Source: Diadema antillarum (taxonomy: Eukaryota). Taken from it: 64,000 nt of DNA. Position 1 is the stretch's first letter, and each line of letters starts with the position of its first letter. This document shows positions 51,706 through 64,000 of this stretch, piece after piece. The translations under genes and the position numbers were made by a program. The notes below the pieces were generated by a model that worked only from the letters and a program-made list of their open reading frames with translations, was not told the origin of the DNA and searched no databases. The DNA is taken from positions 2,418,001-2,482,000 of the forward strand of contig NW_027270946.1 in the NCBI RefSeq assembly GCF_040938485.1, read 5' to 3'.

Positions 51706-54700
51706 ATGCCGTCGGCTGGAGCTGTATGTGTGCCAACCATTACCCCTCTGAGGCTGCCTTTGTCTGGCCAGTCCAGCAATCAGATTGACACCAACACACT
51801 CGTTGAAATCAAGTCTGGTAAAGAAACTTATTTTATTAGCACATTTCTGTAGTATGTATTCCAGTGTGGTGCAAGATCCCATTTACGACTGGTAGGTTTA
51901 TTAACAACATATTATCAAGAGCTTGTGGTTGTATCAATTAGATGATGGAAATATTGCCAACCTACATGTATACATTTTTTATTAAGTTGAGTTATAGAAA
52001 ATAAACAATTTATAAGTTATTCAAACATATGTCTGTCCATTACATGATTACTATTGGTGTACATGATAATTACAAACTAACCTCAGCTTGTTTATGTTAT
52101 CATCAGTCATTGTACATTATGTATGTTTATTCTTTTTTTTCCTTTCTTGCAGTATTATCCATATAGTGTAAATTTCTTTACTTTTAAATTTCAAAATGGG
52201 TATGTTCTTGTATTTTTGCAGCTACTCATAGAGCAGCCATCTACTTCAGCACAAATGGAAGCAAACCTGACCCATTTGCTAGGAAGGACAAGAACACCAT
52301 CCGCTACAAAGGACCATTTCTCCTAAATCCTGGAAAACGGACCATCAAGGCTATTGCTGTGTCCAGGTACTGTAAGACTGTCAGTTGGGACACAAAATTT
52401 GCTACAAGCAGAGAAGTGACTGTAATTGAATTAGTTCACACATCATAACACATAAATCAAGGTCTTTCCACCACAGTGTTGCGTACATGTACTTCTTTCT
52501 TGTGTGGAATACAAAATATCTGCTGATGCATGGTACTTGTTCACAGTTGTCTTCAGCGGACCTCTTTGAAACAAGTATTATCTCTTTGTATCTCAATCCC
52601 AGCCTCAATACTATTTAAGTGAAATATGATGAAGAATTACTGAATGATGCACAGAATGAAGAGAAGAGTAAGCATGGCATGTGATGTCCCCTTCTCATCC
52701 AGTATTTGATTCTTTCTTGAGAAAAAGTTCCTTCCTGATATTAGTGAAGTATAATGCAGACCCAGCTGCACTGATCATAGGGGTTTTCTTGCATCACATG
52801 CTTGTATGGTTAAGTATGAAAGGAGCAGATAGGCATGATGTTAAAATGTTCATTAACAATTAGAAAGTCTTGTGATATGGTTAGAGCAGTGCACATATTC
52901 AAAACTAAGGTCAAATCATTAATCAACTGGTAAGAAGTGTGGTGACCAAAAGTTAAACAAGTAACTCATTGTAATTGGAATCACATGTCTTTGTATAATC
53001 TTTCTCTTTTTTTGAGTACATACGGACATATGCACTATGTGTTATGCGTTATAATAGGACTGTTAATCATAGTTAATTATTATTAACTCTTATTGGCAGT
53101 GATGGCAGTCGAGAGAGTCATGTGAACAGTAAGACTTTCATCGTCGATTGGGTCCCGCCTGAACCAGAGGACAACAATGAGGATGACGACCAGAGTTTCA
53201 TCATGGACTCCAGGCGAACACAGAGGTCTCTCCATGTGAGTAGATTGTAATAGAAGCAGGGAAAAATACATGTACGTCCTCTAGAGTAATTATCCCTGTT
53301 TGCAACGGTACAGGGTGCTTATTTGTGGCAGGGGCAGTTCAGCATTGATAAAACAGCTAAAGTAACGCTTAACACTGGCACCAGTCTGACGGTCCTAGAC
53401 CAGTAAAAATCAATGTTGGGCTAGTAACTTTCTAGGAATTACCAAATTTACAAGTCCAACATGACCGGTAAAAAGAAAAAAAGGGGAAAAAATAGCATTG
53501 TCAGGGCCAGTCGAAGTAAAAAAAAAAAGGGACCAATAAATTTTAGGTTCAGACCAGTAAAAAAATGAAAAACTGGCTATCTACTGGTCCGTTAGGGGCA
53601 GGTCAGACCAATAGAGAATATGGGTTAGCGTGCAGCCCTGGATAAAGAGCATCAAGTGTATTTAGCCCCACTTTAGAACAAAAGCGGGAGTTTCTCGTAA
53701 GTGGGAAGTGAGAGTACTCTTGCACATGACTGGGCCCTTTCATCAATGAATGACATGGCCCCTGCTACAAATAGGCACCCTGTCACAAAGAGGGAGAATA
53801 ACATGAGTACATGTTGTTCAGAGAACAACTCGACAAGTTGGTTATTTATGCTTCTTCTTGAGATTTGATGTCTTTGACACTGTAGTGGTTTTAGGGTGCA
53901 AGCTCAATATCAAACCCCTGATATTCAAGGGTAAGGGGGTGGGTATGTATCTGGAGATCATTTGTGTTTTTACTCCATCCATCATTGAGAGTAAGATTAT
54001 CAGAAGGCACACAGCTTTAAGTCACAGTTTCAAGTCACCAGAAATTATAGATCGACTTTGTGGGGCATAAAGTGTGTTTGGAATTTAATAGTATACTATG
54101 TAATAACCTCTGAGTTATACATTACCAACCTAGTAAATATTACTTTGTAAATGTGTGACAAACTGAAATCAATACACTTGAAGTGTTCTCTTTCAAAAAC
54201 CAAATAATTGTATGCTCAGTGGAATACAAAATGCAATTTCCCTTTGTGGTAATAGTTTAAGACTAAGGAAATTACAGCTTTTCTCTGATCAAGGTGCCAA
54301 ATGATGCATGTAATCAATGCAGGAGAAATTTTGGTCTTTGCCATTTGAAACCACCTCATCCGTGTGTGGTTAAAGTTGCTGTGTATTTTTGCAAAGTTAG
54401 TCGGTGATGTTGTACCTGTGTTTTGTTTTCATTAACAGAGTTCTTTCAATAGCAGTGGTCCCTTGGAGACGATACACACCAATGGTGCAGTGACCCTGGC
54501 CAGATCTTCTATGGTTAGTAGAAGTCTCTCTAGAGTAGCATTTCACTTTTGCAACCCTCTCCAGTTTCTTTCAAAGTTTCACTGAAGGTGGTATGTTGTA
54601 CAATGACAATACACTTCAACTTTCAAATGAAGTTGTGATATCTTATATTTTATAAACAGTTTTACCAATGCCAAGTGATGTGATCAAGTGTCTGTTGTAC

Positions 54701-57700
54701 CTGGCATGTGTCACAAATTGACAATATATGAAATGTTCTTGCATGTAAACCACATTTTTTTTTTTCTGTACTAGAACTTTGAAGAGGCCTCTCTTGTTGA
54801 GACCATGCATGAAAAGACCATTACTGTGCAAGAACCATATGTGTAGATGCAGCTGTTTGAGCATTCAATAGTCGTTCTCAAGAGAAAGCAAAGTTCATTG
54901 AAATGGCATTCCCTAACCTGTAAAACTTCAAGCAAAATCCTTCTCAGATGTCATGAAATCTTGAAGCTCATGTTTACTCATGGCGACCATTTTAAAATGA
55001 GTGAACCTCTTTCTATTGGCAATATCTTCAAGGAAGCACCTTGTACCAGGTCGGTAAAGGCATAACATGATATGAAATTGCTATGGAACAGTACTCCTCA
55101 CAGTCCAAAATTGCATAACTGTTTGTCTGCACATGCCTGTAACTATATATTCAAAGTTAAAAACATTATCTGTCATATCTGTGTGCTACAGCTGCCCTAT
55201 ATTCTTTCTGAGATAAATGCATTTCATGAAAATATGACCAAAATAACCAACATATTTTTGTTTAATTTTTTAATTTTTTAATTTTTTTTTAATGAAAATA
55301 ATTTTCTCATCATTATAGCCAATGCATGGAATGGCATCTGGACCGGTCCCCTACAACGCCTGGGGTGCCACATCCCCACAGCCTCAACCGATGACGACAC
55401 TCAACAAAAACCCGGATTACTTTTTCCAGTAAGTGTACTCCACATTGCTGTCTGCAAGAGTAACTGATAACGTACGCCCATTAAGAGTCCAAATCACATT
55501 TCATTTTTTTTTTTCATTCGGACTTAAATATTGCGACCATTTACAGGGGACTATCCTTGACTTGAATCTCTGGAATGATTTGAAAGGATAGTCCATATCA
55601 GAAGAAAGAGATCCAATACTTTTTTTTTGGACTCCTAATGGCTGCCGTCAATGCCCAAGAATAATAAAAGAGTTTGTGATATATGTGATGGTACGCTTTA
55701 CACGGAATTCTCAGATGTATAGGAAACTCTTCTTCAGATGTACATTAGCTAAATATGTATGGACTATTGATATTTGCAGCATTATTGCAAAAATGTGCAC
55801 ATGTACTGAGAATGCAGTACTTTTTTCTTTTATTTCCTTTTTTCTTTGGTTTCTATTTCCTTATAATAGTTACCACATGCATCAGACCAGCCCACGTCAG
55901 AATCAGCCCCAAGTGAGACAGTCTATTGGCCAGGGGTCTGCGATGGTTCAACCACCGGTTATTATTGATGTAAGGAGCAGATCATTCTGTCATTTGGTGC
56001 ATACAGAATAATAAAGAGAATGATGATGACAAAGATGAAGATGTTAAAGATAGTGTTGGTGGTAGGGGTGATAATGATGCTGCTGTATGTCATATCAGTA
56101 TTGTTGATAATGGGAATGATGATGATTATGAGGATACATAGGATGTACCTGTGACAATGGTAATGCCAACATTCATTTGCTCTAAACAGCATCATATGCA
56201 ACCTTTTATCCTTCAACACTTACAGAATATATTGCAATTTTTTTTGTTGGTATATGCCATTTTTATATAGTTGAATGAGCAAAGCATGTACTGTAAAATC
56301 TGTAATCTTGATATTGCTTATTTATCTGTGATGATCAAAGTGAATTTGCATCAAAACTCCTTTTACGCCAGTATTATGGGTAGTATAGACATATGCAAAA
56401 TGAAACTAAAAACTTACAAGTTCAGTGTCTTTATGTATAATGGAGGCTTTAACAATGCTGCTACAAGCTCAATTTTTTGCTTCTTTAATTTTTTAGGCAA
56501 TGACAGGTTACAATAACCAGGAGGCGTGGCGCCCCCTCAGTGTACCCCTCCCTGCCGTGCTGAACCAATCCATTGGCACACAGACCGTGGGTCTCTTTTA
56601 CCCCACCCACGAGCAGCTGACGCGCTCCCCACAGGATGTCGAGCAAGTGCGGGCGGTGAGGGAGCAGGCTACCACCATGGCCTCCGCCCCTGCGCCCCAG
56701 GAGCGCCCCAAGCTAACCGACATCAGTCCTGGCAAGGGGTACTGGAAGCGCCAGCTCGCCCACATCGCGGCCCACCTGGAGGCCTTCTCCCAGCGGGATG
56801 CGGAGTTCCGCGCCCTCGTCGGCAAACCCAAGATGGGGAAGGTGAGAAGCAGAAAGTCACAAAATGTTTTCCTCCTTCATTGCACTGGCATTGATCATAC
56901 CAAACAGATTTGAAATGCTTGAACTGTTTTGTGATAACCCTATTTCGATGAAGATGAAAGTCCTTGAGAGTATTGTGCTAATTAAATTCTATGTTAAACA
57001 CACATTTTCAAGTACTGGTATACCAGTTTTTATGATTTAAACAAGTACATAGATGACTACTTGATTGCTTTTAGCAGAGGATTTCTATATCACACTTACC
57101 ATTTGATTGGCATCTTACTACACAGGTGTTTTACTCACTGAACCTTACACAAATCCCTGAAGATACCTAAGATTGGGAATGGAGAATACAAGTATGATTT
57201 ACCTCTAGACTAATCATATCACCACATCTTTCATTTCATCAAACATAGTCATCCACCTTCATGATTATGATAATATATATTTTGTGCAAATTACTCAGCA
57301 TAGGACTCCAATAAAACTCATAACAACCAACCAAGCCATATCAAACCAATTGTTAAAGAAAATGCTACATAGACGGGCTACATTCTACAATGTGTATGTT
57401 TGCCTCATTACAGATCACCTATGCTAATGTGGAAGATGATGGTGTGGATGTGACACTGACCATTAGCCTCGAGTCGCGTGGTTCAAATCCTCCAGTCAGG
57501 GGCAACAGAGCTCAAGTGGCTCGTCAAGGTAGGTCAAAGGTCGCATCAATCTGTCCTCTTACAATGTACATTTGGTGTCAATGAAACATGTAGGAACACG
57601 AAATCTGTAATTTTGTAGCAATTATCTCGACTGTGATCCACTGGCTTTCACGTCTTCCTCCCATTTTAACCATGGAAAGCAAACTACTGTGTTATCTAAA

Positions 57701-60700
57701 TTAAACATATTGTGTAAAGATATTCTTTTAATATGTTCAGGAGGTATCTGGTAATTTTGCAAATCAGATGTCAGTGCTGTCATTAATGTACCTCATCAAA
57801 TGGGTCACCAAAAGAAAGTAATTACATATCTGTGTACACGTGGAAACTAGAGTTCCATTTCATAAACTATCTTGCAATAATTAAAGTGTGCATTAATCAC
57901 AATTTCAGAGGAACAGTTCGGTAACAACCAATCACATGCAAGTTATTTCAGTTGTTGCAATGGAAAAGAATGCAACTTCATCTTGCTTTAATTTTAAACA
58001 TCTGAATACAATGAGCCCCAGAACAAATGTTTAGAAAAACGATGAAAACAACAGATTTGAGTTAATTATGGTGCTTCAAACAGTGGAACTAAAATTTCCT
58101 GGCCAGGTGACTGTCGAAATGTGGCCCTGTAACTTGTGGCAACTATCATTCATGGCAAGTAAAGCAAATTCTGTTTTATTCCTATCTCATTTTGCAGAAG
58201 CTATTTTGGCAAAGAATAAAACAAGTGATGCAGGTAAGTTCATATCAATGTTGCTTATATTTTATGATTTTGTTATTGTTTTCGTTCTGGTCTGCAATTA
58301 ACTGAGGATTTTTTTAGTTCACTCGTAAAAAAGCATCTACGTGCATGTAATTTGAAACAGCACTTCTGCTATTTTTTTCCTCACATTTGGCATCAATGTT
58401 ATGTGAAGTAATCTGGACTGTAGAAATCTGGCACAATTGTGTAAACGATATTTTTCCAAGTGCCATTAATGCAACAAAAAGGATTTACCCCCAAAATAGT
58501 GGATGAAACTTGTTGTGCAAGTTTTAGCAGTTTGTACAGATATGCTAGTAGAAGTTTAATATGTGCATTGGGTTCAATCAATTCTTTGTGCTCCTACCTG
58601 AAGTTCTCCAACACTGCTTGTACTAAATGCATAACACTGCACCCTTCCTTAATTTCTGCCATATATGGAAGAGTTAGTCTTTATTCAAATGAGACAAATA
58701 AAGGATCCAAGTCAATGAAGATTCACAGAAATAATTCATAAGAAAAACATTGTACAGTTGTTCATTAATGCTTTTCAAGATGCGTGAGTCGTGCTGATAA
58801 AAGTTCTTGTCGTCCCCCCAACAGAGGAGCTGTACGGAGCCACGAAGAAGAAGAGACCGCTCACCAAGAAGCTGGCCGCAAAGAAGAAAGCTGAGGAGGA
58901 GAGGCTTACAGTAAGTCAGTTTTTAGTTTTGAGGCCCTACTGAAATGATTAACCACAGATATCGATGTGAAACCCACTGACAGGAACTCTCCCCAGATGT
59001 TGAAAAATTGATGATATTCATTTCTTCAAACTGCCTTGCCTTGAGATATCCCAGGGAGACATACGCATTGTATTTTTGCTGATGTGCTGCTCTTATATTA
59101 AAAAATAGTAGTGATAAAAAAAGTCTTCGCTTGCTCAGTGATAATCTTATGGATGATATATTAGTTTGTTGTGGAAGAATGCATAAATAGAATTGTTTGG
59201 GGCAGTGATACCAGGTAGTACCTGTAAGTGGTGCATTTTCTTACAATTGTGATAAATGAAGGCAACTATAGAACAAGGACGAAATGCATTACTCTGGACA
59301 TGAGAATCAATAGGACTAGAAACAAACTTGCACTAAGCAGAAGTGAAGGGTTCCAGTTATTACTTGCATGAAATAACAGTACTAATTTTGAGTGTTTTGA
59401 GTATCTATTGACACTTGGAACTTGCCATAATGTAGCTATTTACTATGCTCTAACACTTATGCTCATATTCACATTCACTTGATCAGTGCTGCAGTTTTAA
59501 TCAGTGATACAGACTATCTAGATTTTAGCAGTCAAAAAACAAAAATTAGGCTGTGATCCATTGGTAGCTTTTCTTTCAATCTACCTCATGATTAATATGG
59601 TGTTGTTTCGATGAGTGGTGCAGACTGTCTAGCAGTCAAAAATCTGAAATTGAGTTGTGATCCATTGGGAGATTTTCTTTCAATCTTCCTCATATGGTAT
59701 TAATTGTTTTAATCAGTGGTGCGGACTATCTAGTAGTCAAAAAAAAAAGCAAACATGAATTGTGATCTGTTGGTAGCTTTTCCGTCAATCTACCTCATAT
59801 GGTGTGCTGAGACTGTTTCTTCATATTTTTCTTCCCCAGCCCGAGGAAAAGAAACTGATCAGAGAGGTTGGACCACGGGGTGAGGGAAATGTGGACGTTG
59901 TGCAAGACATGCTTGATGAGGTAGGTGGTAATATTATGGGAGGGACATGTGCCATGTGTCTGGGATAATCATTATTCCCTTCTGCGCCAGGGACCTGGGA
60001 CAGTGTGTACAATCCTATTGCATTCTCTGTGCCAATCAACACTCAAAGCACACAGGGTTGATGGAGACAGAGAGCTTCGGATTGACATGGTGAATGGTAC
60101 TGTGTATTGTTTGTTGTAAAGGTTGAACTATGGTGTATTATGGTGATGCAAGAAAAGCTTCTGCTATTCATTCTAGACAGCTTGTAAAGGCATGTGAGAT
60201 ACCAGTAATATGTAATGTGTTAGAGACTCTTTGCAGTTGAAAGTGATTACACGTACAATGATTACTCTTCCAGGAATCACTGTAATGCAATAATGCTGGT
60301 AATCTTTATTCATTTTGATATGAAACTGAGGCAGGTAATAGTGGGTTTGGAAGGGATGGTCGCTCTGTGGATTGAAAAATAAATCCACTTGTGTTGAGAT
60401 ACTCTATACACCAGCCACGTCATACCCACCAACAAGTTCCAACTTAACCCGTTTATGAGGATGAGTCCCATGTATACTTGGGCAAGTGTCTATGGGAAAT
60501 GCGTGTTGTAGCAAAATCTGCCCGTCCTCAACGGGTTTCCAACGATACATCTCTGCGATCACTCCTGTGACTCACTTTGGTGCCCCCTGGTGATCACATG
60601 GCATTATAATTATTTTGCATGCACTCGACATGAATATACACTATAAAAATGGGTTGATGTTATCACATGAGAACACCACAAAGTTAGTGGCACTGTACAA

Positions 60701-63700
60701 AGTGTATGGGAATAATACCCTATTGCTTCTGAGTGGTGCTTTCAGCTTGCATACTTGAACAGACTGGGTTCTATTCTTCATCGAAAGAAGTTTGGCAATA
60801 TCAAATATTCTGTCTATCAAAATTCATTTTACATGGTTTTTGTGTAAACAATTCTCAAACTGTACAAAGTGTATGGGAATAATACCCTATTGCTTCTGAG
60901 TGGTGCTTTCAGCTTGCATACTTGAACAGACTGGGTTCTATTCTTCATCGAAAGAAGTTTGGCAATATCAAATATTCTGTCTATCAAAATTCATTTTACA
61001 TGGTTTTTGTGTAAACAATTCTCAAATCAAACAGTCTTCATCATTCATATGATTGTATACAGGAAAGACAATTCATTTGATAATCCCTAAGATGTGCACA
61101 AAATTCTAGCACTATGTTTCTCCTTTCTTTACAGGGAGCAGATCCTAACTGTGAGAACAAAGATGGCATTCCAGCCATTGTCTATGCTGCAATGAACAAC
61201 CAGGTGGACTGCATTCCAGTGTTGGCGGATGCAGGGGCAGAGGTCAACAGGAAGACTCCATCAAGGTATGTAAGAGGTCAAGGGTCGGAGTTCCCTGGCT
61301 GTGAACACTTCTCTTGGGGTTTTGCTTGTACGTTTACTAGCTTGCAAATGGGATTTAGTACATCACAGTGGTGGATCCAGCAAGGAGCGCACTGGGCACG
61401 CGCCCCCCTTTATTTTTGTTGAAACAAACAAAACAAAACAAAACAAAAACAAAACAAAAACAAAAACAAAATTGGTGGAGGGGTGCGTGCGCCCCCCTTT
61501 AATTTTGTAAAGGTGCCCCTCTTCACGGAATTCCTGGATCCGCACGTGCATCATCTCCCTTGAACCAGAAGAAAATGAAACTTGTCTGCTCAGTGGCCTC
61601 TCACAATAAAATGGCATTTCTGCTCTGTGTCTATAATTTGATAGCAGGCCTACGGACAAAGAGAATTGATATAGAAAGACAATGACTTATGGCTTTGCTG
61701 CACTAGATCATTAATTCATCAGCCATGTTGCTGGCTTTCAAAAAAAACCCTCAAGCCTAACCAAATTATTTTCCGTCATTACCATTTCCTGTCTTTATTC
61801 AGGGACATTATATGGGAAAGTTATGCTCACATTGATTGCAGTGTATTATGCTGTAGCCCATTATACATTCTGAGATCTTCCTTTTGCTGAAGCCATTCGA
61901 TTGATGTCACTGATAGAATGAATAAGTAGTTTAGATAGGATAGTGATCCAGATAAATTTTGATGCTTTATGTTGGCATTAATCACATTAGTACCTGAGTT
62001 AGACCAGGAAACTGGGCATTGCACAAGTGGAAAGAGAGAAAATACAATTTGATAAAATCGTGTTAGACCTAGCGTAAACCTAGTATCACTTCAATATACA
62101 CATTTTGAGGAACTTTTAATATAAGGTTGTATCATTCAAGATTTCTGTATAACACGTTGGTACAGAGTTTGTATCGTGCATACACAAGATAAAAATTGTC
62201 TATTCAAAGTAAGATTTTCGTGCATCTGTTAAGTGAAAAGCTCATTCCCACTGACAAACAACAGAAGAAAGGAATTGAATCCAAAACCTCTGTCAACTGA
62301 TCTCAACCCATTGAACCCATATCACATGGAAAAAGGAACACCACCCTCAGCTGAAAAGCTCATTCACATTGACAGTGAAGAAAGAAGGAAAGGGAAAAAA
62401 AAAAATGAATCCCAAACCTCTTTTGACCAATCTCAACCAAATTAACACATATCCCATGTCCAAGAAAGCAAAGGGAACATCACCCTCATCTATCAACTGA
62501 AAGGCTCATTCCCATTGACAATAAAGAAAGAAAGAAGGATAGAAAAAAAATGAATCCAAAACCTCTTTGGACAAATCTCAACCCATTGAACCCATATCAC
62601 ATTCACCAGGAAAGGGAATGTCGCCCTCATGTATCAACTGAACAGCTCATTGCCATTGACAGTAAACAAAGAAGGAAAGAATAAAAAAGTATCCAAAATC
62701 TCTTTGGACTAATCTCAACTCATCAAATGCGATATCACATTTACCAGGAAAGGGAACACTGCCCTCCATGAGGCCGTACTCCTGGGACCAGAAGGCCAGG
62801 AGGCCATCGAGGCCCTCCTGGATGCGGGGGCCAGCGCCAAGGTGCAGAACGCCAAGGGAGACACGCCCTACGACCTCGCCATCTCCAATGGTTACTCTTC
62901 GGTGGTGGCGCTTTTCGCCTCCAGCATGGGCCAGGACATGCTGAACAAGATGACCAAGTCGAAGAAGGACAAAGGGAAGAAGGGACGACGGAAGGATGAG
63001 GATAGTGAGGAGAGTGAAGAGTCTGAAGAGGAGGAGAAACCAAAGAAGAGGAGCAAAAAGTACAGGGAGAAACTACCCAAGGTGACTATATTCTTTTGCA
63101 ATCATATAGTTTCATGCACTTCTAAGTCTTATTATTGTACCTTCTTGTGTTAAAGGTATCGTATAGTTTTGGTTGAGGCCTAACATATTTGTGTGAGATA
63201 ATAAGAAACCTCGTAAGAAATGTGAAAGAGCATGTAATTCCAAGAGGATTTGAACATATCAAAAAACAGAGTGATCCTAATAAAACTCTCTGCTACATTG
63301 CAATTGTTGTTCTATCTCTCTGTAATTAGGGCAATCTCACAGTTGATATTAATGTTTGGAGTGTATATCCATGAATTTTGCAACTTTTAGTTGTGCTGAC
63401 AGATGAAAAATATGCAAATGTTTAAATAATTACATATTGTCATTGAGGCCAGTGTATGTGAGTTGCACAAAGCTGGAAAAAAAAGGGTTTACTCCTGATT
63501 TAATAATCTCTTAATTCTGCATACTGCATCCTATCCTTATTTTGCAGATTGTGTGATTTGTGTGGATTTTTAAAAACATTTTTCTTAACGACATTAATTT
63601 TCAGTTATTTCAAAATAAATAAACATATAAATCATTGATGGCCAACTACAGAAATGACACTGCATGTATGATAAATCTTTAAGACAAAGCCTACATACAC

Positions 63701-63836
63701 TAACTATTGCTTTGCTGCACTCCTTACATTTTTTCCTGTTTTTGTATTGCCCAGGATAAAGGCACAGTGAATCCAGTCTCCAGGTTTGATCCTCAGGCCG
63801 ATGCAGAGAAGTTGCGCAAGGCAATGAAGGGACTTG
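51706..63836 (+). CDS. DZANK1-like protein without zinc ribbons, with ankyrin repeats, continuing into an annexin repeat; partial (at least 610 aa, runs off the window)
   Basis: Exons are 51706-51817, 52222-52366, 53100-53235, 54439-54513, 55319-55428, 55870-55912 (alternative end 55969), 56497-56841, 57414-57528, 58198-58233, 58825-58910, 59840-59920, 61135-61265, 62748-63081 and 63755-63836. All are GT-AG with consistent phases. Recalled DZANK1 hallmarks: AGAVCVPTITPLR, IYFSTNGSKP...GKRTIKAIAVS, IGTQTVGLFYP, ISPGKGYWKRQLAHIAAHL, EVGPRGEG...EGADPNC, GNTALHEA. Confidence 0.9.
53310..53640. mobile_element. hAT-like MITE in intron (right end GTGCAGCCCTG; left end uncertain)
   Basis: Internal ACCAGT repeats; shares its right-end sequence with 35907-36027. 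Confidence 0.5.
59496..59820. repeat. Three diverged ~100-110 bp tandem units just upstream of an exon acceptor
   Basis: TTTTAATCAGTG...CAGACTATCTAG...GCAGTCAAAAA...TGTGATCCATTGGTAGCTTTTCTTTCAATCTACCTCAT recurs at about 59496, 59608 and 59707. Confidence 0.8.
60693..61026. repeat. Perfect 167-bp tandem duplication
   Basis: 60693-60859 is identical to 60860-61026. Confidence 0.9.
61366..61548. mobile_element. GC-rich MITE, copy 3
   Basis: CAGTGGTGGATCCAG...CTGGATCCGCACGTG, with 5-bp TSD CATCA at 61361-61365 and 61549-61553, and an internal (AAAAC)n expansion. Confidence 0.8.
62234..62770. repeat. Four ~120-145 bp tandem units overlapping the exon acceptor at 62747
   Basis: The unit start TGAA..GCTCATT recurs at 62234, 62352, 62498 and 62639. 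Each unit ends in a version of ATCACATTTACCAGGAAAGGGAACACTGCCCTC. Confidence 0.85.
63755..63836 (+). CDS. Annexin repeat 1 start (exon)
   Basis: DKGTVNPVSRFDPQADAEKLRKAMKGL(G) is the canonical annexin GTV.P...FDP..DAE.LRKAMKGLG. It ends in a phase-1 GTGAGT donor. Confidence 0.92.
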
Positions 63837-64000
63837 GTGAGTTTGTCCTTGGTACTTTGTGGAATTCCCATATGTAGTGGGATTTGCTACTGGTTTTGTC
63901 ATATTGGACCATTCTGACTTCCCCTAGAAGATACTGACTTGATAATGTGCCAACAGAAAATGATAGGGAGTGAGAGAAGAGATGAAAAATTTCAGAAGAA

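What the first reader, a model, noticed from the sequence alone, without database searches (positions are those of the whole stretch)
62748..63836. Apparent DZANK1-like/ankyrin to annexin gene fusion
The last ankyrin exon (62748-63081) has no stop codon. It runs through a K/D/E-rich linker (KSKKDKGKKGRRKDEDSEESEESEEEEKPKKRSKKYREKLPK) to a phase-0 donor, AAG/GTGACT. The next exon starts in phase 0 with a textbook annexin repeat. No promoter-like or start-bearing exon is visible in the 673-bp intron. As I recall it, vertebrate DZANK1, a ciliary trafficking protein, ends after its ankyrin repeats, and annexins are Ca2+-dependent phospholipid binders. The chimera would couple a ciliary scaffold to Ca2+-dependent membrane binding (inference). 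It is the strongest candidate for an undescribed system here. Intron read-through would instead give a short alternative C-terminus ending at 63153.
Basis: partly seen in the sequence, partly recalled or inferred. Interest (0 to 1): 0.85.

Follow-up and report, generated by a model that had tools for sequence, protein, structure and literature searches.

The report
Annexin fused to DZANK1-like ankyrin protein
The ankyrin exon and the annexin exon belong to one real, conserved sea-urchin gene, but that gene is already annotated in this genome and in at least 14 other species, so it is real, uncharacterised and not a new discovery.

Summary
Exon 62748-63081 (last ankyrin repeat plus a K/D/E linker) has no stop codon and ends AAG|GTGACT. 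Exon 63755-63836 starts in phase 0 with the beginning of annexin repeat 1.

The window is Diadema antillarum, 100% identical to GCA_040938485.1. NCBI's own annotation joins exactly these two exons in a 22-exon, 918-aa gene: Fn3_assoc sandwich, TQT motif, ankyrin repeats, disordered linker and four annexin repeats. I rebuilt that protein residue for residue with canonical GT-AG sites.

The same architecture is annotated in all five echinoderm classes and three hemichordates. Bivalves have a related Fn3_assoc + eight-repeat annexin.

Against a related species, 15 of 16 exon substitutions are synonymous, while the intron interior cannot be aligned. No junction-spanning RNA could be obtained.

I found no paper describing it.

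It is a paralogue of DZANK1, not its orthologue. It lacks the zinc ribbons but keeps the GTQTVGLFYP motif, a probable LC8-binding site.

Likely role (inferred): a Ca2+-dependent membrane anchor joined to an LC8/microtubule-binding head.

The parts
51706..51817 (+). Exon 1, from the start codon (MPSAGAVCVPT...); start of the Fn3_assoc / GH29D-like beta-sandwich
   Evidence: Splice-aware rebuild reproduces P0156 exactly; tblastn 100% identity
52222..52366 (+). Exon 2, core of the Fn3_assoc domain
   Evidence: Pfam PF13287 E 1.6e-09 on this stretch
53100..53235 (+). Exon 3, end of the beta-sandwich and an acidic stretch
54439..54513 (+). Exon 4, in the low-confidence (probably disordered) region
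   Evidence: pLDDT below 50
55319..55428 (+). Exon 5, in the low-confidence region
55870..55969 (+). Exon 6 (FHYHMHQTSPRQ... segment, conserved in all fusion orthologues)
56497..56841 (+). Exon 7, the DZANK1-homology core. It carries the TQT motif (56578-56586, in IGTQTVGLFYP) and the conserved helix SPGKGYWKRQLAHIAAHLEAF... (56725-56841)
   Evidence: The motif is invariant in the 12 aligned full-length fusion orthologues and shared with human DZANK1
57414..57528 (+). Exon 8, predicted beta-hairpin segment (DDGVDVTLTISLES...)
58198..58233 (+). Exon 9, a 36-nt micro-exon (AILAKNKTSDA)
58825..58910 (+). Exon 10, a basic KKKRPLTKKLAAKKK segment
59840..59920 (+). Exon 11, start of the ankyrin domain
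61135..61265 (+). Exon 12, ankyrin repeat
   Evidence: Pfam Ank_2/Ank_4
62748..63081 (+). Exon 13, last ankyrin repeat plus the K/D/E-rich disordered linker. It has no stop codon and a phase-0 donor AAG|GTGACT
   Evidence: 12 of 13 interspecies differences are synonymous. Linker pLDDT is below 50
63082..63754 (+). Intron 13 (673 bp). It contains a high-copy interspersed repeat at about 63140-63271. The interior is not conserved in the related species
   Evidence: 550 letters replaced between 63147 and 63704; summed contig depth above 2e5 over 63140-63271
63755..63836 (+). Exon 14, first annexin exon: end of the linker plus helix A of annexin repeat 1 (DAEKLRKAMKGLG). Phase-0 acceptor, donor G|GTGAGT
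   Evidence: 3 of 3 interspecies differences are synonymous. Eight further annexin exons lie beyond the window end, at window-equivalent 64498-72286

Best explanation
Exons 62748-63081 and 63755-63836 are exons 13 and 14 of a single 22-exon gene of Diadema antillarum. The gene runs from window 51706 to about 8.3 kb past the window end and encodes a 918-aa protein.

The protein has, in order: an N-terminal Fn3_assoc beta-sandwich; a long low-complexity region; a DZANK1-homology segment with an invariant TQT motif and an amphipathic helix; ankyrin repeats; a roughly 40-residue disordered K/D/E linker; and a complete four-repeat annexin core with intact type II Ca2+ sites in repeats 1, 2 and 4.

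It is an ancient paralogue of DZANK1 that lacks the double zinc ribbons and has an annexin as its C-terminal half. Put the other way, it is an annexin whose variable N-terminal 'head' is a DZANK1-like module. That much is shown.

Inferred mechanism: the annexin core binds acidic phospholipid membranes when Ca2+ rises. The head binds the LC8 dynein light chain through the TQT motif and probably dimerises on it, and it may sit on microtubules as DZANK1 is reported to do. The protein would then tether membranes or vesicles to an LC8/microtubule platform in a Ca2+-dependent way, plausibly at the ciliary base. I put about 0.9 on the single-gene fusion and about 0.3-0.35 on this tether mechanism.
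For: Sequence: the open exon, its phase-0 GT donor, the phase-0 acceptor, and no in-frame ATG ahead of the annexin exon.

Same genome: locus L001 (GCA_040938485.1) is 100% identical to the window. It carries one annotated 918-aa gene across the junction. My splice-aware rebuild with GT-AG sites reproduces that protein exactly, stop codon included. The annotation was made by NCBI EGAP, which integrates RNA-seq.

Architecture: Pfam finds Fn3_assoc + Ank + 4x Annexin, E 1.6e-90.

Conservation: the same architecture and a conserved junction (Y[KR]EK[LR]PKDKG[TS]V) occur in asteroids, ophiuroids, holothurians, echinoids and crinoids, with a recognisable, less conserved form in three hemichordates. 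Anonymous genomic contigs whose linker peptides match the ophiuroid, asteroid and holothurian proteins end the exon at the same ...PK|GT.

Selection: 15 of 16 exon substitutions against a related species are synonymous, and the intron interior cannot be aligned.

Fold: the AF2 model has confident ankyrin (pLDDT 82-90) and annexin (about 80-92) domains joined by a linker with pLDDT below 50. G-x-G-T-38-[D/E] is intact in repeats 1, 2 and 4 of all orthologues checked.

Mechanism: GTQTVGLFYP is shared with human, frog, chicken, amphioxus and mollusc DZANK1. DZANK1 pulls down DYNLL1/2 (PMC4617706). A DZANK1 dimer plus an LC8 dimer were assigned as microtubule-associated proteins on the transition-zone A-tubule (bioRxiv 10.64898/2026.06.11.731632). 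ANXA11 is a precedent for an annexin core as membrane anchor with an adaptor head (PMC6890474).
Against: No RNA read or transcript contig crossing 63081/63755 was seen here. No RNA run was listed. The runs I laid turned out to be genomic DNA of a relative. Fragment searches found only genomic read-through ORFs.

All the orthologous proteins are computed gene models, and homology-guided annotation is not fully independent between species.

Short read-through ORFs after the donor exist in every species, so an ankyrin-only isoform cannot be excluded.

LC8 binding, Ca2+/lipid binding and localisation are untested for this protein. The DZANK1 assignment in the cryo-ET preprint itself rests on AlphaFold fitting.
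Confidence: 0.85

Rival explanations
1. Annotation chimera. Two neighbouring genes, a DZANK1-like gene that terminates in the 'intron' and an independent annexin with its own promoter and first exon, are wrongly merged by gene predictors.
For: No junction-spanning RNA was obtained here. Read-through gives a stop 24 codons after the donor. Gene models can propagate between species by homology.
Against: Exon 13 has no stop, and its GT donor is conserved in five echinoderm classes. The annexin exon has no in-frame ATG before the M of KAMKG, so it needs an upstream coding exon. The intron interior is not conserved and is partly a high-copy repeat, so there is no conserved alternative first exon. 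Both sides are phase 0, and the residues flanking the junction are conserved from crinoids to echinoids. The fusion N-terminal halves and the annexin halves each form their own ambulacrarian clade with largely matching within-group branching.
Confidence: 0.05
2. Dual output. The fusion is real, but intron 13 retention or intronic polyadenylation also produces an ankyrin-only DZANK1-like isoform ending ...KLPKVTIFFCNHIVSCTSKSYYCTFLC (stop at 63153). This is not exclusive of the best explanation.
For: Read-through ORFs are short in all species seen: 2 to 24 codons, counting the Val from the GT donor. Canonical DZANK1 ends at the equivalent point after its ankyrin repeats.
Against: The read-through peptides are not conserved between species. 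No isoform of that kind appears among the RefSeq isoforms retrieved. There are no RNA data either way.
Confidence: 0.12
3. A decaying or non-functional fusion: a recent accidental juxtaposition that is transcribed but has no selected function.
For: None specific, beyond the absence of any functional study.
Against: Fifteen of 16 substitutions are synonymous. The architecture is kept across Ambulacraria. About 200 columns are invariant across the 12 orthologues, including the Ca2+-site residues and the TQT motif.
Confidence: 0.01

Closest known systems
The same gene as annotated in public databases: P0156 (Diadema antillarum, 'uncharacterized protein'), XP_033629438.1 (Asterias rubens 'DZANK1-like isoform X1'), XP_054774896.1 (Lytechinus pictus), XP_011674043.1 (S. 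purpuratus, partial), Holothuria leucospilota 'Annexin A7', and others
   Same: Identical (Diadema) or orthologous. They share the exon junction, the Fn3_assoc + Ank + 4x annexin architecture and a length of about 900 aa.
   Different: Nothing structural. The names are inconsistent (DZANK1-like / uncharacterized / Annexin A7 / UniRef 'Annexin'). I found no publication on it.
[quoted passage not shown] It is a NINL and DYNLL1/2 partner in dynein-based vesicle transport, and was assigned with LC8 to the transition-zone A-tubule
   Same: N-terminal Fn3_assoc beta-sandwich, the GTQTVGLFYP motif, the following conserved helix and the ankyrin repeats. Identity is 35-40% over the C-terminal half, 39% to human.
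   Different: The fusion has no double zinc ribbon (PF12773) and carries an added linker plus annexin core. It falls outside the whole bilaterian DZANK1 clade (SH-aLRT 98), and echinoderms keep a separate true DZANK1. It is therefore a paralogue, not the orthologue.
Annexins with long adaptor N-termini, especially ANXA11 and ANXA7. ANXA11 tethers RNA granules to lysosomes (PMC6890474)
   Same: A canonical four-repeat core, with best solved relatives annexin A6, A7, A5, A8 and A4 at E 1e-96 to 1e-195. The logic is the same: a Ca2+/lipid-binding core plus an N-terminal head that selects the partner.
   Different: The head here is about 600 aa with folded domains (beta-sandwich, ankyrin) and a TQT motif, rather than a Pro/Gly/Tyr-rich low-complexity tail. 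The core groups with lophotrochozoan eight-repeat annexins and not with the vertebrate A-family sequences sampled (limited sampling).
Bivalve Fn3_assoc + eight-repeat annexins (Pinctada, Saccostrea, Tegillarca, Mya; about 1100 aa, named 'annexin A6-like')
   Same: The same MPSAGAV... beta-sandwich (53-55% identity) and the SPG.G.Y/F.K...H.YAH helix segment, followed by annexin cores. Those cores lie in the lophotrochozoan clade that is sister to the ambulacrarian fusion cores (SH-aLRT 95).
   Different: They have no ankyrin repeats, two annexin cores instead of one, and a mostly degenerate TQT motif (kept only in Saccostrea).

Membership tests
Annexin (PF00191) | Four homologous repeats of about 70 residues forming the core | tested here: met
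   Four stretches, E 1.6e-90, on the complete protein of this gene. Only the first 28 residues lie inside the window (Pfam E 0.1 alone). The remaining eight exons were confirmed in the identical locus L001.
Annexin (PF00191) | Type II Ca2+-binding motif G-x-G-T followed 38 residues later by D/E | tested here: met
   Present in repeats 1, 2 and 4 (G628, G700, G859) of Diadema and of the eight other orthologues scanned. Repeat 3 has KWGTDE in eight of the nine. Actual Ca2+ and lipid binding were not tested.
Annexin (PF00191) | All-helical annexin core fold | tested here: met
   The AF2 model has five-helix repeats over residues 615-914 at pLDDT about 80-92. Sequence matches to solved annexins A6, A7 and A5 reach E 1e-98 to 1e-195.
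DZANK1 orthologue | Double zinc ribbon (PF12773 DZR) | tested here: not met
   There is no PF12773 hit in any of the fusion proteins, but it is present in the canonical DZANK1 of the same echinoderm species.
DZANK1 orthologue | Groups with bilaterian DZANK1 in a tree | tested here: not met
   The fusion clade (SH-aLRT 92) lies outside the clade holding all protostome and deuterostome DZANK1 (98) (quick search, unrooted).
DZANK1-like superfamily (homology) | N-terminal Fn3_assoc sandwich, GTQTVGLFYP segment, conserved helix and C-terminal ankyrin repeats | tested here: met
   Pfam hits; motif scan; BLASTP 35-40% identity over 330-380 residues to human, amphioxus, Saccoglossus, mollusc and L. 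pictus DZANK1.
LC8 (DYNLL) client | TQT anchor motif in a disordered segment that binds the LC8 dimer | tested here: inconclusive
   The TQT motif is invariant at window 56578-56586 and lies in a low-pLDDT region. Binding is known only for DZANK1 as a whole and was not tested for this protein or mapped to this motif.

The most novel reading that the evidence does not exclude
The DZANK1-paralogue::annexin fusion arose once, before protostomes and deuterostomes split. It was kept in Ambulacraria, remodelled in bivalves and lost in chordates. It works as a Ca2+-switched tether between an LC8/doublet-microtubule platform at the ciliary base or transition zone (or a dynein-linked cargo adaptor) and the adjacent membrane. 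That would be a microtubule-to-membrane link made Ca2+-sensitive by an annexin, a kind of link not described for cilia.
Probability: 0.15. Interest if true: 0.65.

Novelty: new variant of a known kind. Interest (0 to 1): 0.35.

Why it matters
As a gene model it adds nothing new: it is already in RefSeq for this genome and many others.

Its value is as an uncharacterised, strongly conserved domain combination. It joins two well-studied modules: an annexin Ca2+/membrane sensor and the LC8-binding, microtubule-associated DZANK1 scaffold.

If the tether idea holds, sea-urchin embryos would be a tractable system. They are rich in cilia and can be injected. They could show how Ca2+ couples membranes to the ciliary-base cytoskeleton or to dynein cargo. 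They could also show what the conserved DZANK1 core does without its zinc ribbons.

The inconsistent database names (DZANK1-like, Annexin A7, uncharacterized) also deserve a consistent annotation.

Tried and rejected
1. RNA evidence. A search for RNA runs listed none. A search of kind 'any' listed only DNA or unknown-kind runs. The three unknown-kind runs of a related species proved to be genomic: their contigs contain intron sequence and show no exon-exon joint. They were useful only for substitution patterns.

2. Junction-spanning transcript fragments. Searches with residues 545-700 and 420-800 of the protein found only eight-repeat annexin linkers, ordinary annexins and genomic read-through ORFs. 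P0274, which appeared to span an upstream splice junction, stops exactly at the next exon boundary and is best read as genomic DNA lacking that intron.

3. Literature. Searches for DZANK1 + annexin, for accession and LOC numbers, for annexin + ankyrin + echinoderm, and for 'double zinc ribbon' + echinoderm terms found no description.

4. I considered the gastropod and Mytilus proteins of 560-655 aa without zinc ribbons as orthologues of the N-terminal half. I rejected this because they nest inside canonical mollusc DZANK1.

5. I considered a donor at 63840 for the annexin exon, which was an artefact of my first script. I rejected it because only 63836|GTGAGT continues the protein into the next exon.

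6. I made no fold search, because sequence evidence for both domains is unambiguous.

The N-run at 45911-46109 was left untouched.
Full report
**1. Observation**

After the acceptor tttaccag|G at 62748, the frame is open through KGNTALHEAVLLGPEGQEAIEALLDAGASAKVQNAKGDTPYDLAISNGYSSVVALFASSMGQDMLNKMTKSKKDKGKK...KKYREKLPK. The exon ends AAG|GTGACT at 63081 in phase 0.

Pfam calls Ank and Ank_2 on this exon. After cccag| at 63755 the frame reads DKGTVNPVSRFDPQADAEKLRKAMKGLG and ends G|GTGAGT at 63836. That is the start of annexin repeat 1. On 28 residues alone Pfam gives only E = 0.1. Read-through of the donor stops at 63153.

**2. What the locus is**

I ran a phmmer search of 1.8 billion representative proteins with the exon-13 peptide. 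Behind many generic ankyrin proteins it found a 908-aa Asterias rubens protein (P0045, XP_033629438.1, 'DZANK1-like isoform X1'). That protein matches the whole exon at residues 486-592 and then continues into four annexin repeats.

Searching with that protein gave the same Fn3_assoc + Ank + annexin architecture, at about 900 aa, in these species:
- Asteroidea: Asterias, Patiria, Acanthaster
- Ophiuroidea: Amphiura
- Holothuroidea: Apostichopus, Holothuria
- Echinoidea: Diadema, Lytechinus, and Strongylocentrotus (partial)
- Crinoidea: Antedon, Anneissia
- Hemichordata: Glandiceps, Ptychodera, Saccoglossus

The Diadema antillarum protein P0156 maps to the window at 94-100% identity per well-aligned exon. 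Its locus L001 (GCA_040938485.1, contig JBFRCO010000058.1) is 100% identical to window 41706-64000 outside the N-run. The window therefore is D. antillarum.

The genome's own NCBI EGAP annotation, which integrates RNA-seq, already joins 63081 to 63755 in one gene. I rebuilt the coding sequence with canonical AG/GT sites. It has 14 exons in the window and 8 more in L001, at window-equivalent 64498-72286. The translation equals P0156 residue for residue and ends at a stop codon.

The annexin exon sizes are 95, 114, 91, 137, 190, 59 and 123. From memory, these match the classical vertebrate annexin exon pattern (95, 114, 91, 80+57, 94+96, 59, 123) with two introns lost. I did not check this.

**3. 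Is the junction real without RNA?**

I could not obtain RNA across the junction. No RNA run was listed. The unknown-kind runs I laid were genomic DNA of a related species. Fragment searches gave only genomic ORFs. The case therefore rests on comparative evidence, which is strong.

- **Substitutions.** Between the window and the related species, 12 of 13 substitutions in exon 13 are synonymous third-position changes. These include changes in the linker up to 63069. The thirteenth is a conservative A>G. All 3 substitutions in the annexin exon are synonymous. Past each donor there are indels and dense changes. 63148-63703 cannot be aligned at all, and 63140-63271 is a high-copy repeat. No conserved alternative first exon can hide in the intron.
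- **Donor conservation.** Anonymous genomic contigs whose linker peptides match the ophiuroid, asteroid and holothurian proteins end this exon at the same ...KEK[LR]PK|GT, without a stop.
- **No independent start.** The annexin exon has no in-frame ATG before the Met inside helix A.
- **Junction residues.** The residues across the junction, Y[KR]EK[LR]PK|DKG[TS]V, are conserved through all echinoderm classes and are recognisable in hemichordates.

I put the chimeric-annotation rival at about 5%. An additional ankyrin-only isoform by intron retention cannot be excluded.

**4. Anatomy of the protein**

The domains are, in order:
- **Residues 1-100:** Fn3_assoc / GH29D-like beta-sandwich.
- **About 100-235:** low-complexity region, pLDDT below 50.
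- **About 236-345:** the DZANK1-homology core. It holds the invariant IGTQTVGLFYP (TQT at window 56578-56586) and the helix SPGKGYWKRQLAHIAAHLEAF.
- **Next:** a short predicted beta-hairpin and a basic stretch.
- **About 420-550:** ankyrin repeats, pLDDT 82-90.
- **556-592:** K/D/E linker, pLDDT below 50.
- **603-918:** annexin core, pLDDT about 80-92. G-x-G-T-38-[D/E] is present in repeats 1, 2 and 4, and KWGTDE in repeat 3.

The best solved relatives of the core are annexin A6, an unnamed annexin (6tu2), A7, A5, A8 and A4.

**5. Relationship to DZANK1**

The protein lacks the double zinc ribbon (PF12773). Echinoderms keep a separate canonical DZANK1 that has it. In a tree of the non-annexin parts, the fusion proteins form one clade (SH-aLRT 92). 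That clade lies outside the clade containing all protostome and deuterostome DZANK1 (98). So this is an old paralogue and not DZANK1 that lost its ribbons recently. This agrees with, and refines, the neighbouring first-stage note s1-229962.

Bivalves have proteins of about 1100 aa with the same N-terminal sandwich and helix segment. These have no ankyrin repeats and eight annexin repeats. In the annexin-core tree the ambulacrarian cores (97) are sister (95) to the lophotrochozoan eight-repeat annexins, which include these bivalve proteins.

Both halves thus point to each other, which is compatible with one fusion before the protostome-deuterostome split. The trees are quick searches, unrooted, and thin on single-core annexins, so this is a hypothesis (about 50%).

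**6. How it probably works**

The following is established for relatives:
- Annexin cores bind acidic phospholipids through Ca2+ bridges, and their N-terminal regions choose the partners. ANXA11, for example, tethers RNA granules to lysosomes (PMC6890474).
- DZANK1 binds NINL and specifically co-purifies DYNLL1/2 (PMC4617706).
- A 2026 preprint assigns a DZANK1 dimer with an LC8 dimer to the A-tubule surface of the ciliary transition zone.
- TQT is the classical LC8 anchor (general knowledge).

The following is shown here: the TQT segment and the following helix are the best-conserved part shared by DZANK1 and the fusion protein.

The following is inferred. The head recruits or dimerises on LC8, and possibly sits on microtubules. 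The annexin half, on a flexible 40-residue leash, grabs a nearby membrane when Ca2+ rises. I give this tether mechanism about 0.3-0.35. The ciliary-base localisation is more speculative.

**7. Novelty and verdict**

The exact model is in RefSeq for this genome, and the architecture is annotated in at least 14 other species under inconsistent names. I found no paper about it. It is an uncharacterised variant of a known kind: an annexin with an unusual, folded, DZANK1-derived head. Interest is moderate to low as a discovery, and somewhat higher as a lead for function.

Noticed in passing
window 62347-62758: A 145-bp tandem repeat (2.9 copies, 80% matches) in intron 12 runs into the acceptor and the first 11 nt of exon 13. 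The upstream copy at about 62600-62640 carries the same ACCAG|GAAAGGGAA, which makes it a possible decoy acceptor at 62609/62610. By my manual reading it would run into an in-frame TAA before 62748.
   Followed up: partly
window 63140-63271: A high-copy interspersed repeat inside intron 13. Summed contig depth is 2-6 x 10^5 in three runs of a related species, and the repeat is also present in a third organism's small runs. Many loose ends flank it. I did not classify the element.
   Followed up: no
window 60692-61026, 59526-59803 and 61422-61471: Intron 11 holds a perfect 167-bp x 2 tandem duplication. A 104-bp x 2.7 repeat ends just upstream of exon 11 (start 59840). There is also an (AAACA)n microsatellite.
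   Followed up: no
P0161-P0164 (bivalves; not in the window): Pinctada, Saccostrea, Tegillarca and Mya have proteins of about 1100 aa with the DZANK1-type Fn3_assoc N-terminus and eight annexin repeats but no ankyrin repeats. Their cores lie in the lophotrochozoan clade that is sister to the ambulacrarian fusion cores. The Biomphalaria and Capitella 'annexin A6' models in the same clade start abruptly inside repeat 1, so they may be truncated at the 5' end.
   Followed up: partly
P0187, P0193, P0197, P0228, P0210 (gastropods, Mytilus): These DZANK1 orthologues of 560-655 aa lack the double zinc ribbon but nest inside canonical mollusc DZANK1. This is either independent loss of the ribbons or incomplete gene models.
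   Followed up: no
L001 22793-30581 (window-equivalent 64498-72286): The annexin exon lengths are 95, 114, 91, 137, 190, 59, 123 and 60. They look like the classical annexin exon pattern with two introns lost (137 = 80+57, 190 = 94+96). The comparison is from memory and was not checked.
   Followed up: no
window 40266-43059 (- strand) and 45911-46109: The upstream neighbour on the minus strand is an annotated 524-aa DED-domain protein (PF01335) in the same genome, matching another first-stage note. The 199-N run at 45911-46109 was left unread and unfilled.
   Followed up: no
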